64,000 nucleotides of DNA from Ostrea edulis (Eukaryota): assembly GCF_947568905.1 (NCBI RefSeq), contig NC_079164.1, forward strand, positions 24,738,001 through 24,802,000, given 5' to 3'. Shown in pieces: positions 33,101-35,485 of the stretch; position 1 is the first letter of the stretch, and each line of letters begins with the position of its first letter. The notes under the pieces were generated by a model. The model did not search any database, was not told the DNA's origin, and saw only the letters and a list, made by a program, of their open reading frames with translations. Position numbers and translations under genes: made by a program.

Positions 33101-33491
33101 GAGAAATAAATTTTTAAAGAGGCGGTGAAGAAACATTGAACCTCGACTCGACCTCTTTGACCTCTGTTTCTTTGAAAACTATGCGACGTAGCAAAATAAA
33201 AGTAAGTTTAACGAATTCCGCGCCCTAGAATCTATCAGATTAAATCTACCATGCACAGATATCGAATGTCTAGAAAAAGAAAATGAGAAAAAACTCTCTC
33301 CTCGAAAGCACAAATCCGCCATTTTGACGGCCGCCATCTTGGCTTCGTCTCCGAAGTGAGGGATGTTTTCGAGGAGGTCCGCGCTTTCCTGATATATACC
33401 GGCGCGCTCGCCAGTTCGCTTCACTGGTGATCCAGCAAAGGTTTGATTATTTTAAAGAAGTTATAGAAGAAAGAAGATAGAAGAAAGAAGA
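33101..33491 (+). promoter_or_regulatory. Duplicated promoter and 5'UTR, copy 1
   Basis: ~90% similar by eye to 35095-35485. Contains CCGCCATTTT/CCGCCATCTT (YY1-like), GGTCCGC at 33376-33382 and TATATA at 33393-33398. Confidence 0.8.
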
Positions 33492-34286
33492 ATGGCTGAA
33501 GGAAGAAGAGAGCCGATCTACAATTTCCAGACCCTGCCTGGCTTTCGGTACCGGCTGGTAGTGGTGGCTGAGGAGCGGGTAGGGGAGAATTGGGTCGTCC
33601 GTTCTCAGAACGACCTGAGTACCTTCTCCCCTTTCGACCGGAGTGGGGCCCGTGAGATCATCGACCGGGTGCGGCAAGAGTATGAAGGGAGGGGACGCCG
33701 CCGCACCGCTCGGATGTCCACGGCTACAAGACCACGCCGACGGGCCCCACAGCCACCCTCACCACCACCACCTTACTCCCCGGCGACGCCTACAGCAGCA
33801 CCACCAGCGATACCATCGGCACCGGAGGAATACAGCCCGGTGCCGATGAGCGAGTCGCCAGCGTCACCGGTGGAGTACTCACCGAGGTCACCGTCCCCCG
33901 CGCCACCTCCAAGCCCAGCCCAGAGTCCGTCGCTGTTGGTCGCAGACACGCCGCCACCATCACCACCGAGACCAGCAGCCCCTGCAAGACCCCCACCACC
34001 TACCATCCGGTCTGCAGGGAGGACTCCGCCACCGAGACCAACCCACGCACCTGTGGCAACTCATCCCCCGAGGAACCACCCTATGACTGTCCCTGGCTGG
34101 GCAGATAGGGCGGTTCCTATCTGGTTTAAGTGCCCTGTCTGCTGGCAAGACAGGGTACACTCCGGTATTACGTGCAGGGGATGTAGGCAGCGCCCAGCTT
34201 GCTGCCTGTGCGTGGAGCGGATAGAGGAGCGGCGACACACCCGGGGACGGTGCCCGTTATGCCGCTTTACCGGAGCCAGGCATTGA
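33492..34286 (+). CDS. Pro/Ser-rich protein with C-terminal C4C4 RING-like finger (264 aa), putative E3 ligase
   Basis: CPVC-x10-CRGC-x5-CCLC-x13-CPLC; PPPY motif and three YSP motifs including YSPRSPS. Confidence 0.75.
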   Translation: MAEGRREPIYNFQTLPGFRYRLVVVAEERVGENWVVRSQNDLSTFSPFDRSGAREIIDRVRQEYEGRGRRRTARMSTATRPRRRAPQPPSPPPPYSPATPTAAPPAIPSAPEEYSPVPMSESPASPVEYSPRSPSPAPPPSPAQSPSLLVADTPPPSPPRPAAPARPPPPTIRSAGRTPPPRPTHAPVATHPPRNHPMTVPGWADRAVPIWFKCPVCWQDRVHSGITCRGCRQRPACCLCVERIEERRHTRGRCPLCRFTGARH

Positions 34287-34308
34287 AAGTCGGTCCTTAG
34301 GACCAAAC

Positions 34309-34345
34309 GGCCCTTTTTAGGGCCACCCACATGTTACGAAAAGAT
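34309..34345 (+). terminator. Histone-type 3' stem-loop plus HDE, copy 1
   Basis: ACCAAAC-GGCCCT-TTTT-AGGGCC-ACCCA, then GAAAAGAT at 34338-34345. It lies 23 nt after the RING ORF stop, with no plus-strand AATAAA nearby. Confidence 0.88.
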
Positions 34346-34393
34346 GCTTTTATGACAATGATTGAGAAACAAATTAACACCAGTTGCACTTTA

Positions 34394-34897
34394 TTAACAA
34401 ATACATGATTTAATGACAATATACACTTGTTGATCACACCTATAAGCAAAATCATGAATACATTGTCTGTAATGAGTCCAATTTCCTCCCGCTAACCCAC
34501 ATCCAATCTTATAAGGGAAGGCTAAAGTCTTGTACGATAATGTGGCCAATTCACGTAAACATTGTTGAAACCATAGTTCTCGCTGTTCGGGTATATCTCG
34601 ATAGCGGGGAATACGCTGAGTTCCTTTTCCGTAATCCCACTGGGCTAAGAAACAAATCACATCAGGGTCTGTAGCATTTGATAAGATGCGTAACGTGCCG
34701 GGTATTCCTCGATCGGGTTCTATAGCTAGATTTCTACGGCCTAAGGGTCTCCGTGTAGCATACAAGTTGCCCCATGGATATTTGTCGGCAATACTTTGAC
34801 TTAATCCATGAGGTTTCACCGTTAAACAATTACATTGTTGTACAATACCATCGACTTTCATAGTGAGTAAATCTCCCTGCACATAAGTCACACTCAT
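34394..34897 (-). CDS. Macrodomain protein (TARG1/DarG/Poa1p-like ADP-ribose-processing module, 167 aa)
   Basis: V.GDLL, IVQQCNC, and LAFPYKIGCGLAGGNW. AATAAA overlaps the stop codon (34390-34395). Confidence 0.88.
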   Translation of the reverse strand: MSVTYVQGDLLTMKVDGIVQQCNCLTVKPHGLSQSIADKYPWGNLYATRRPLGRRNLAIEPDRGIPGTLRILSNATDPDVICFLAQWDYGKGTQRIPRYRDIPEQRELWFQQCLRELATLSYKTLAFPYKIGCGLAGGNWTHYRQCIHDFAYRCDQQVYIVIKSCIC

Positions 34898-35094
34898 GAT
34901 GTGAATGATGCGTGTCGAGGCTACAGCTTTCGTTTATATAAGTCACATTCACACGGTGTGTTTGTTGAGTGTCAATCATGGGGTTTCTTTGTCAAAGGTT
35001 CACTACCCCATTCAAAGTGGCATTAAAATAGGATGAAATAGGTTTTTCTCTATCGATCTAACTATCATTGAGGTTTCTACTACCTCACAGACGT

Positions 35095-35485
35095 GAGAAA
35101 TGAAGTTTTAAAGAGGCGGAGAAGAAACATCGAGCCTCGACTCGACCTCTTTGACCTTTGATTCTTTGAAAACTATGCGACGTAGCAAAATAAAAGTAAG
35201 TTTAACGAATTCCGCGCCCTAGAATCTATCAGATTAAATCTACCATGCACAGATATCGAATGTCTAGAAAAAGAAAATGAGAAAAAACACTCTGCTCGAA
35301 AGCACAAATCCGCCATTTTGACGACCACCATCTTGGCTTCGTCTCCGAAGCAAGGGATGTTTTCGAGGAGGTCCGCGCTTTCCTGATATATACCGGCGCG
35401 CTCGCCAGTTCGCTTCACTGGTGATCCAGCACTGATTTGAAGGATTTTTAAGATATAGAAGAAAGAAGATAGAAGAAAGAAGAAG
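35095..35485 (+). promoter_or_regulatory. Duplicated promoter and 5'UTR, copy 2
   Basis: GGTCCGC at 35370-35376, TATATA at 35387-35392, and the same purine-rich leader AGAAGAAAGAAGATAGAAGAAAGAAG as copy 1. Confidence 0.8.

What the first reader, a model, noticed from the sequence alone, without database searches (positions are those of the whole stretch)
33101..35485. Duplicated ~390-bp promoter with H4-like architecture drives both stem-loop genes
Seen: 33101-33491 and 35095-35485 are near-identical although the downstream ORFs are unrelated. Each has GGTCCGC ~10 nt upstream of TATATA, YY1-like CCGCCATNTT motifs (two in copy 1; in copy 2 the second reads CCACCATCTT) and the same purine-rich leader up to the ATG. 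Established: vertebrate H4 promoters carry a GGTCCG HINFP (HiNF-P) site just upstream of the TATA box, and YY1 binds CCGCCATNTT. Inference: together with the stem-loops, this looks like a whole histone-gene-type expression cassette, captured or convergently evolved.
Basis: partly seen in the sequence, partly recalled or inferred. Interest (0 to 1): 0.78.

Follow-up and report, generated by a model that had tools for sequence, protein, structure and literature searches.

The report
Histone-style gene cassettes in oyster Maverick
A 21-kb virus-like Maverick/Polinton element in an oyster genome carries two copies of one expression cassette (shared promoter, different small gene, histone-type RNA end), so two of its accessory proteins are probably made through the cell's histone-mRNA pathway; whether the promoter itself is histone-H4-like is not shown.

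Summary
The duplication is real. 33101-33491 and 35095-35485 are 93.4% identical, with a sharp left edge. Each copy has GGTCCGC 10 nt before TATATA, CCGCCATNTT motifs, and an ATG-free leader with a purine-rich end. The repeat is only half of the unit: a 3' module of about 90 nt is also duplicated. It holds a histone 3' stem-loop above Rfam's gathering score, a purine-rich downstream block, and the poly(A) signal of the converging neighbour gene. The ORFs between the modules are unrelated to each other. Both cassettes lie inside a complete Maverick/Polinton (29256-50362, 361-nt inverted repeats, 6-bp target duplication, protein-primed PolB, integrase, packaging ATPase) in an Ostrea edulis-like genome. 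ORF1 belongs to a multi-copy, element-borne family; ORF2 has almost no relatives. Both are GC-rich outliers within the element. The histone likeness is secure for the 3' end and unproven for the promoter. GGTCCGC occurs at chance frequency, CCGCCATNTT also sits in unrelated repeats of the window, TATA boxes are common in the element, and the host's H4 promoters could not be reached. Verdict: a co-regulated, histone-3'-end expression cassette of a virus-like element, not described in the literature I could search.

The parts
29250..29255 (.). Left copy of the 6-bp target-site duplication (TTGGTA)
   Evidence: Alignment of the two ends. The flanks together continue a repeat that is uninterrupted at about 2693-3009 (D17-D20).
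29256..29616 (+). Left terminal inverted repeat of the Maverick/Polinton
   Evidence: I1: 362-nt arms, 98% complementary (7 mismatches). moves the true start to 29256.
33101..33491 (+). 5' module, copy 1: promoter and leader of ORF1
   Evidence: 93.4% identical to 35095-35485, with a sharp left edge. Blocks with no differences at 33191-33280 and 33371-33430; hypervariable at 33431-33460.
33316..33340 (+). Tandem pair of CCGCCATNTT (YY1-like) motifs, copy 1
33376..33398 (+). GGTCCGC, a 10-nt gap, then the TATATA box, copy 1. Expected transcription start about 30 nt downstream of the TATA box, near 33423 (inferred).
   Evidence: No ATG between 33366 and 33491.
33492..34286 (+). ORF1, 264 aa: small N-terminal domain, invariant basic motif (residues about 70-86), proline-rich disordered spacer, C-terminal Cys-rich RING-like domain
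   Evidence: GC 0.64 and GC3 0.61, an outlier in the element.
34292..34304 (+). Extra 5-bp hairpin directly 5' of the histone stem-loop, cassette 1
   Evidence: 49-nt 3' end: -19.5 kcal/mol, z = -3.67.
34304..34349 (+). Histone 3' processing signal, cassette 1: stem-loop 34309-34324, ACCCA 34325-34329, purine-rich HDE-like block 34338-34344
   Evidence: Rfam RF00032, 39.5 bits (gathering 34); coordinates.
34308..34395 (.). 3' module, copy 1: stem-loop and HDE-like block (+ strand) plus the poly(A) signal of the converging gene (- strand, 34390-34395)
   Evidence: D11 and D12.
34394..34897 (-). 167-aa gene between the cassettes, macro-domain-like, with its own TATA box about 41-43 nt upstream of the ATG
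   Evidence: weak matches to macro-domain chains, E = 1.4e-4.
35095..35485 (+). 5' module, copy 2: promoter and leader of ORF2
35310..35334 (+). CCGCCATTTT plus the degenerate second site CCACCATCTT, copy 2
35370..35392 (+). GGTCCGC, a 10-nt gap, then the TATATA box, copy 2. Expected start near 35417 (inferred).
   Evidence: No ATG between 35360 and 35485.
35486..35713 (+). ORF2, 75 aa: acidic Trp-containing motif and a basic C-terminal tail
   Evidence: GC 0.60 and GC3 0.71.
35740..35760 (+). Extra 8-bp hairpin directly 5' of the histone stem-loop, cassette 2 (different sequence from cassette 1)
   Evidence: 75-nt 3' end: -32.9 kcal/mol, z = -3.71.
35757..35802 (+). Histone 3' processing signal, cassette 2: stem-loop 35762-35777, ACCCA 35778-35782, HDE-like block 35791-35797
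   Evidence: Rfam RF00032, 36.6 bits (gathering 34); coordinates.
35761..35853 (.). 3' module, copy 2. The poly(A) signal of the converging 110-aa gene follows directly at 35854-35859 on the - strand.
   Evidence: D11 and D12.
35876..36208 (-). 110-aa gene converging on cassette 2; own TATA box 46 nt upstream; unrelated to the 167-aa gene
36353..36856 (-). Adenovirus-type cysteine protease candidate
   Evidence: PF00770, E = 0.0018, below the curated cut-off.
36856..38259 (-). 467-aa ORF, candidate major capsid protein by position only
   Evidence: No Pfam hit; inference from gene order.
41428..42519 (-). rve integrase with a C-terminal chromodomain
   Evidence: PF00665, 1.2e-9; PF00385, 3.8e-8.
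44617..45270 (-). A32-like packaging ATPase
   Evidence: PF04665, 8.7e-7, 29.1 bits against a cut-off of 22.8.
45296..45847 (-). IAP-like gene (BIR + RING)
   Evidence: PF00653, 1.7e-19; PF13920, 4.2e-11.
45869..49843 (-). [quoted passage not shown]
   Evidence: PF03175, 1.5e-54.
50002..50362 (-). Right terminal inverted repeat
   Evidence: I1.
50363..50368 (.). Right copy of the 6-bp target-site duplication (TTGGTA)

Best explanation
The 391-nt repeat is the 5' half of a two-part expression cassette that a 21.1-kb Maverick/Polinton, integrated in an oyster genome, carries twice, around two unrelated small intronless GC-rich ORFs. Shown: the 5' module (distal block without differences, two CCGCCATNTT motifs, GGTCCGC, TATA box, a 126-nt ATG-free stretch ending in a purine-rich tract) and the 3' module (a hairpin, a canonical histone stem-loop 22 or 48 nt after the stop codon, ACCCA, and a purine-rich block 14 nt after the stem) are both duplicated, while the ORFs differ. 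Inferred: RNA polymerase II starts about 30 nt after the TATA box (near 33423 and 35417), giving mRNAs of about 0.9 and 0.37 kb with 69-nt leaders. These are cut 4-5 nt after the stem-loop by the SLBP/U7 machinery instead of being polyadenylated. The two accessory proteins would then be co-regulated and tied to the histone-mRNA pathway, that is to S phase, when the element's DNA and the host's chromatin are copied. All other genes of the element that show a recognisable 3' signal use poly(A) signals. The shared promoter is best read as the family's own TATA-type promoter. It may contain a histone-H4-type site, but that is not demonstrated.
For: Duplication of the 5' module and of the 3' module (D11 and D12). 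Rfam RF00032 above gathering at both 3' ends, and nowhere else in 64 kb. No poly(A) hexamer within 150 nt after either stop codon, whereas neighbouring genes have one. The first ATG after the TATA box is the ORF start in both copies. The 60 nt spanning GGTCCGC, the TATA box and the expected start site show no difference between the copies, while 12 of the next 30 columns differ. The copies differ more (6.6% overall; 4% in the ungapped 300 nt) than the element's inverted repeats do (1.9%), so the duplication probably predates this insertion. ORF1 is a real, conserved, multi-copy gene: 54 member sequences at 90% identity or more on several Ostrea edulis chromosome-scale contigs, mostly 260-263 aa, plus relatives at 36-43% identity that keep the N-terminal domain, the basic motif and most of the Cys pattern. 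ORF2 keeps its motif and basic tail in its few relatives. Both ORFs are GC and GC3 outliers in the element. Element identity. Mechanism of histone 3' end formation, and the concentration of U7 snRNP in the histone locus body: PMC10730174.
Against: There are no expression data, so the start site, the 3' end and cell-cycle dependence are all inferred. With only two copies, the blocks without differences are weak evidence of constraint (roughly P = 0.03 and 0.09 at the background rate, before correcting for multiple looks) and could be gene-conversion tracts. The HDE-like block could not be checked against the host's U7 snRNA. I did not look at other copies or relatives at the DNA level, so conservation of either module outside this window is unknown.
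Confidence: 0.7

Rival explanations
1. One reading: the 5' module is a genuine histone-H4-type promoter (a HINFP/HiNF-P site just upstream of the TATA box, YY1 sites), captured from a host histone gene together with the stem-loop. It would recruit NPAT and histone-locus-body factors, so that transcription as well as 3' processing is S-phase specific.
For: GGTCCGC lies 10 nt upstream of the TATA box in both copies, inside a 60-nt block without any difference. A histone-type promoter would make mechanistic sense, because U7 snRNP is concentrated in the histone locus body and HiNF-P binds NPAT at H4 promoters (PMC10730174; PMC5706932). The cassette ORFs are GC-rich and intronless with short 3' UTRs, like histone genes.
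Against: The 7-mer is at chance frequency (3 found, 2.2 expected), and its two occurrences are one duplicated event. CCGCCATNTT occurs three more times outside the element, once as a tandem pair upstream of a TATA box in an unrelated repeat, so it looks like a common promoter motif of this genome. TATA boxes precede most genes of the element. The HiNF-P site could not be verified from any held paper, and no host H4 promoter was available for comparison.
Confidence: 0.2
2. The cassettes are relics. The element is a dead insertion, and the promoter and stem-loop are no longer used, or the stem-loops never worked outside a histone locus.
For: The inverted repeats have already diverged by 7 of 362 positions. 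No expression evidence is available.
Against: Both ORFs and nearly all core genes are open. ORF1 is kept open in dozens of copies and at 36-43% identity in distant relatives. Both stem-loops score above Rfam's gathering threshold, with intact flanks.
Confidence: 0.07
3. The repeat is not a promoter. It is a recombination or gene-conversion tract, or it contains an upstream mini-exon (ATG at 33181, donor-like GTAAGT at 33202) spliced to the ORFs from a start site further upstream.
For: The best-conserved stretch (33191-33280) lies far upstream of the TATA box. A donor-like hexamer follows a short ATG-initiated frame in both copies.
Against: There is no TATA box or other start signal upstream of 33181. 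Five ATGs lie between 33181 and 33365, but none between the TATA box and the ORF start. The sharp left edge and the direct run into both ATGs fit a promoter plus leader.
Confidence: 0.03

Closest known systems
Metazoan replication-dependent histone gene expression unit (TATA promoter, intronless ORF, 3' stem-loop plus HDE, SLBP/U7 processing)
   Same: Canonical 16-nt stem-loop followed by ACCCA, above Rfam's gathering score. A purine-rich block at the expected distance. Short 3' UTRs (22 and 48 nt), no intron, no poly(A) signal, GC-rich ORFs, a TATA box, and possibly a GGTCCG-type element next to it.
   Different: The products are not histones (no Pfam or PDB histone hit). The units sit in a mobile virus-like element rather than a histone cluster. 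An extra hairpin precedes each stem-loop. The leaders are long (about 69 nt) and purine-rich. The promoter's relation to histone promoters is untested.
Maverick/Polinton virus-like elements of animals (polintoviruses, adintovirus-like)
   Same: Protein-primed PolB, rve integrase, A32-like ATPase, adenain-like protease candidate, long inverted repeats, 6-bp target-site duplication, about 21 kb, plus lineage-specific accessory genes.
   Different: In the literature I could search, no Maverick or Polinton is described with histone-type 3' ends or a duplicated promoter cassette. Here two accessory genes on the opposite strand to the core genes use them.
EZHIP and K-to-M 'oncohistone' mimics (recalled as a lead for ORF1's invariant basic motif)
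   Same: A short invariant basic peptide in a disordered region. The central residue is Met in 7 and Ile in 2 of 10 family members. PMC6513997 reports that Met or Ile, but not charged residues, at the target-lysine position inhibits the methyltransferase.
   Different: No histone or EZHIP came back from any search with the window's own sequence or its family profile. One family member has Asn at that position. The likeness to the histone H3 tail rests on my memory alone and is written out nowhere.

Membership tests
Replication-dependent histone-type expression unit | 3' stem-loop matching the histone 3' UTR stem-loop family | tested here: met
   RF00032 at 34304-34349 (39.5 bits) and 35757-35802 (36.6 bits), gathering score 34. 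These are the only two in 64 kb.
Replication-dependent histone-type expression unit | Histone downstream element that pairs with U7 snRNA, a few nt after the cleavage site | tested here: inconclusive
   A purine-rich GAAAAGA block starts 14 nt after the stem in both cassettes and lies within the duplicated tail. The host's U7 snRNA was not available, so pairing could not be checked.
Replication-dependent histone-type expression unit | Intronless gene, short 3' UTR, no poly(A) signal | tested here: met
   Single open frames. 22 and 48 nt from stop codon to stem. No AATAAA or ATTAAA within 150 nt after either stop codon.
Replication-dependent histone-type expression unit | Encodes a histone | tested here: not met
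   No Pfam family for ORF1 or ORF2. No histone among the Pfam hits of 10 ORF1 family members at E <= 1 or in the PDB searches.
Replication-dependent histone-type expression unit | H4 subtype-specific element (HiNF-P/HINFP site) next to the TATA box | tested here: inconclusive
   GGTCCGC lies 10 nt upstream of TATATA in both copies, but the 7-mer is at chance frequency.
Replication-dependent histone-type expression unit | S-phase-restricted expression and SLBP dependence | not testable with these tools
   No expression data are on hand.
Maverick/Polinton | [quoted passage not shown] | tested here: met
   PF03175, E = 1.5e-54, 45869-49843 on the minus strand.
Maverick/Polinton | Retrovirus-like (rve) integrase | tested here: met
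   PF00665, 1.2e-9, plus a chromodomain, 41428-42519 on the minus strand.
Maverick/Polinton | FtsK/A32-type packaging ATPase | tested here: met
   PF04665, 29.1 bits against a cut-off of 22.8.
Maverick/Polinton | Adenain-like maturation protease | tested here: inconclusive
   PF00770, E = 0.0018, 18.4 bits, below the cut-off of 21.3.
Maverick/Polinton | Double and single jelly-roll capsid proteins | not tested
   The candidate ORFs (36856-38259; 39624-40608) have no Pfam hit. No structure was predicted for them.
Maverick/Polinton | Long terminal inverted repeats and a 6-bp target-site duplication | tested here: met
   361-nt repeats, 98% complementary. TTGGTA on both sides. A paralogous uninterrupted repeat lies at about 2.7-3.0 kb.
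K-to-M histone-tail mimic (EZHIP-like) | Short peptide detectably similar to the histone H3 tail, with Met or Ile in place of the target lysine | tested here: not met
   No histone or EZHIP hit with the 30-aa segment at E <= 10, with the family profile or in Pfam. The Met/Ile pattern (9 of 10 members) is compatible with the idea but is not a test.

The most novel reading that the evidence does not exclude
A virus-like element of an animal has put together a complete histone-gene-type expression unit, with a promoter that brings histone-locus-body factors and a stem-loop/HDE 3' end, and uses it twice. One cargo (ORF1) would be a histone-tail mimic with Met/Ile at the position of a methylated lysine, joined to a RING domain. 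It would be made in S phase to blunt the re-establishment of repressive chromatin on the element.
Probability: 0.07. Interest if true: 0.9.

Novelty: new variant of a known kind. Interest (0 to 1): 0.62.

Why it matters
Histone-type 3' ends are almost entirely confined to replication-dependent histone genes. A mobile, virus-like element that places two non-histone genes under this signal, with one shared promoter, would be a natural case of a genetic parasite borrowing the cell's S-phase-coupled mRNA pathway. That would give a handle on when and how Mavericks express accessory genes, about which little is known. It would also provide a natural test set of dozens of endogenous copies in one oyster genome for asking which promoter features go together with stem-loop processing. 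If the promoter turns out to be histone-derived, it would document capture of a whole regulatory unit without the coding sequence.

Tried and rejected
- **Bacterial-type scan:** the promoter and terminator counts are at shuffle level and are irrelevant for a eukaryotic element.
- **Literature for the H4/HiNF-P site:** only general statements were found. The two primary papers are not held.
- **Literature for a precedent:** no paper joins histone stem-loops with Polintons or Mavericks. This covers the held library only.
- **ORF1 structure:** mean pLDDT 48 and pTM 0.19, too poor for a fold search, so none was run.
- **ORF1 against PDB and Pfam:** only weak RING matches (E 0.1-1).
- **Histone H3 tail / EZHIP likeness of ORF1's basic motif:** no named hit. 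It is kept only as a low-probability lead.
- **Neighbour genes as part of the duplication:** rejected. The 167-aa and 110-aa proteins are unrelated; only their 3' ends with the poly(A) signals are shared.
- **Bidirectional promoter:** rejected. Only copy 2 has a divergent neighbour, and that gene has its own TATA box.
- **Assembly artefact:** rejected. The copies differ at 26 of 391 columns and flank different ORFs.
- **Upstream mini-exon model:** judged unlikely (see rivals).
- **tRNA scan:** nothing found.
- **Left unused:** the third word-index protein search, the second structure job and all collection scans.
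Full report
**Observation**

The stretch 33101-33491 is repeated at 35095-35485. The repeat finder gives 300 nt at 96% identity without gaps (D1, D8). A gapped alignment extends the repeat to both start codons: 365 of 391 columns are identical (93.4%). The 111 nt upstream are only 53% alike, so the left edge is sharp. The differences are unevenly spread:
- No difference in 33191-33280.
- No difference in 33371-33430, which holds GGTCCGC, the TATA box and the expected start site.
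- 12 of 30 columns differ in 33431-33460.
- One difference in the last 31 nt, the purine-rich end of the leader.

GGTCCGC is at 33376-33382 and 35370-35376, and TATATA lies 10 nt further on. Copy 1 has two CCGCCATNTT motifs. Copy 2 has one plus CCACCATCTT. The window has no N and is not human.

**The unit is larger than the finding**

The two genes also share a 3' module of about 90 nt (34308-34395 and 35761-35853, D11 and D12).
- Each module starts with a histone 3' stem-loop scoring above Rfam's gathering threshold (RF00032: 39.5 and 36.6 bits against 34). These are the only two in 64 kb.
- ACCCA follows the stem, and a purine-rich GAAAAGA block starts 14 nt after the stem.
- The rest of the module is the poly(A) signal region of the converging minus-strand gene: at 34390-34395 in copy 1, and directly after the module at 35854-35859 in copy 2.
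- The two converging genes are unrelated proteins.
- Each stem-loop is preceded by a second hairpin of different sequence, 5 bp and 8 bp.

So the repeated thing is a cassette: 5' module, exchangeable ORF, 3' module.

**Context**

Both cassettes lie in a Maverick/Polinton.
- Ends: inverted repeats of 361 nt at 29256-29616 and 50002-50362, 98% complementary. They are flanked by the 6-bp duplication TTGGTA. The insertion sits in a repeat that occurs uninterrupted at about 2.7-3.0 kb.
- Minus-strand core genes: a protein-primed PolB (PF03175, 1.5e-54), an rve integrase with a chromodomain, an A32-like ATPase and an adenain-like protease candidate. There is also an IAP-like BIR+RING gene.
- State of the genes: they are open. 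One pair of adjacent ORFs within 39624-40608 may be one gene in two frames (one possible frameshift) or two genes. I did not resolve it.
- Host: an oyster. ORF1's nearest relatives are Ostrea edulis proteins at 95, 89 and 75% identity.

**The cargo**

*ORF1 (264 aa).* It belongs to a multi-copy family. One 90%-identity cluster has 54 member sequences on several chromosome-scale contigs, most of them 260-263 aa. Relatives at 36-43% identity come from metagenome contigs. The alignment shows four parts: a conserved N-terminal domain, an invariant basic motif (residues about 70-86), a variable proline-rich spacer and a Cys-rich C-terminus. The C-terminus matches RING domains only weakly. The AlphaFold model is poor (pLDDT 48). 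It places the basic motif in a disordered stretch.

*ORF2 (75 aa).* It had no word-search relative. It has only two relatives among 1.84 billion cluster representatives, plus the C-terminal part of gene model P0003. These share an acidic Trp-containing motif and a basic tail.

*Composition.* Both ORFs are outliers: GC 0.64 and 0.60, GC3 0.61 and 0.71, against GC 0.37-0.49 and GC3 0.31-0.57 for every other gene of the element.

**How it most likely works**

*Shown.* The anatomy above.

*Inferred.*
- Transcription starts about 30 nt after the TATA box, near 33423 and 35417.
- The 69-nt leaders have no ATG. The last upstream ATG lies before GGTCCGC, and the 126 nt before each start codon are ATG-free.
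- The RNAs are cut 4-5 nt after the stem-loop, between stem-loop and HDE, by the SLBP/U7 machinery, as described for histone pre-mRNAs (PMC10730174). They are not polyadenylated: there is no poly(A) hexamer within 150 nt after either stop codon.
- The two proteins would therefore be co-regulated and tied to the histone-mRNA pathway, that is to S phase.
- The two copies differ more than the element's inverted repeats do (6.6% overall and 4% in the ungapped part, against 1.9%). This suggests the duplication is a feature of the family rather than an accident of this insertion. With these small numbers it is only an indication.

**Is the promoter H4-like?**

I could not show it.
- GGTCCGC is at chance frequency: 3 found, 2.2 expected.
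- CCGCCATNTT is enriched (6 found, 0.37 expected). But three of the six sites lie outside the element, and one is a tandem pair upstream of a TATA box in an unrelated repeat. It looks like a common promoter motif of this genome.
- TATA boxes precede most genes of the element, usually 17-59 nt before the ATG. The cassettes differ only in having theirs at -99.
- The held literature confirms that H4 promoters carry a subtype-specific element bound by HiNF-P, which recruits NPAT (PMC5706932; PMC10730174). It does not print the site, and the primary papers are not held.
- The host's histone promoters cannot be reached with these tools.
- A histone-type promoter would make sense, because U7 snRNP is concentrated in the histone locus body. 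That is an argument from plausibility.

**A lead on ORF1**

Its invariant basic motif reminded me of the histone H3 N-terminal tail around a methylated lysine, with Met (7 of 10 sequences) or Ile (2 of 10) at the central position. PMC6513997 reports that Met or Ile at that position, in histone H3 or in EZHIP, inhibits the methyltransferase, while charged residues do not. Searches with the window's own segment, the whole protein and the family profile returned no histone and no EZHIP. The likeness is therefore untested memory, and I give it a low probability.

None of the H3 letters went to a tool, and none are written in the notes or this report. The generic signal patterns typed into scripts (TATA-like hexamer, poly(A) hexamers, splice-donor hexamer) come from general knowledge.

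I therefore fetched no DNA of relatives (no look-up of encoding contigs, the search for related loci or collection scans). As a result, conservation of the two modules outside this window is unknown.

**Novelty and verdict**

I found no description of histone-type 3' ends or of a duplicated promoter cassette in Mavericks or Polintons in the held literature. I rate it a new variant of a known kind.

Noticed in passing
window 45296-45847 (-): The Maverick carries an IAP-like gene with a BIR domain (1.7e-19) and a C3HC4 RING (4.2e-11), directly downstream of the PolB gene.
   Followed up: partly
window 34394-34897 (-): The 167-aa gene lying between the two cassettes gives weak matches to macro-domain chains in the PDB (E = 1.4e-4 and above) and has no Pfam hit.
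   Followed up: partly
window 34292-34304 and 35740-35760 (+): Each histone stem-loop is directly preceded by a second stable hairpin (5 bp and 8 bp). The two have different sequences, so the structure is shared but the sequence is not.
   Followed up: partly
window 31705-32924 (+): Three or four tandem, overlapping plus-strand ORFs of 104-130 aa that look paralogous (shared 50-nt repeats, D5), have no Pfam hit, and end before a poly(A) hexamer near 32940.
   Followed up: no
window 22063-27154: A separate element bounded by inverted repeats (22122-22233 / 27033-27144, 96%). It encodes a tyrosine recombinase (22886-23563, PF00589, 3.3e-8) and several ORFs without a family.
   Followed up: no
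window 2693-3009, 29214-29255 and 50363-50580: The Maverick is inserted in a dispersed repeat. Uninterrupted copies at about 2.7-3.0 kb act as a paralogous empty site and confirm the element's ends.
   Followed up: yes
window 4674-4683 (+), 7011-7020 (-), 10121-10130 (+): Further CCGCCATNTT motifs outside the element. The one at 7011 is part of a tandem pair about 50 nt upstream of a TATA box in an unrelated repeat.
   Followed up: partly
protein P0003 (Ostrea edulis gene model): An annotated 316-aa model joins an ORF1-like N-terminal part to an ORF2-like C-terminal part (51% identity to ORF2 over 37 aa). In that copy the annotation pipeline apparently spliced the two cassette genes together.
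   Followed up: partly
window 38336-39337 (-): A 333-aa very basic protein with internal repeats (DNA repeats D7-D10), placed next to the capsid-gene candidate. It may be a core or DNA-binding protein.
   Followed up: no
window 39624-40608 (-): Two adjacent ORFs in different frames. They could be one gene with one frameshift (perhaps the minor capsid protein) or two genes. No family hit.
   Followed up: no
window 29689-30621 (-): A 310-aa protein with two CCHC zinc knuckles (2.8e-15) just inside the left inverted repeat, followed by a (TG)n tract at about 30990-31060 and 70-nt repeats at 30755, 30817 and 31549. It is unclear whether this is an original Maverick gene or a nested insertion.
   Followed up: no
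window 18533-20238 and 55449-56430: Tandem arrays in the host flanks: a 17-nt unit at 18.5-20.2 kb and a roughly 140-nt unit at 55.4-56.4 kb.
   Followed up: no
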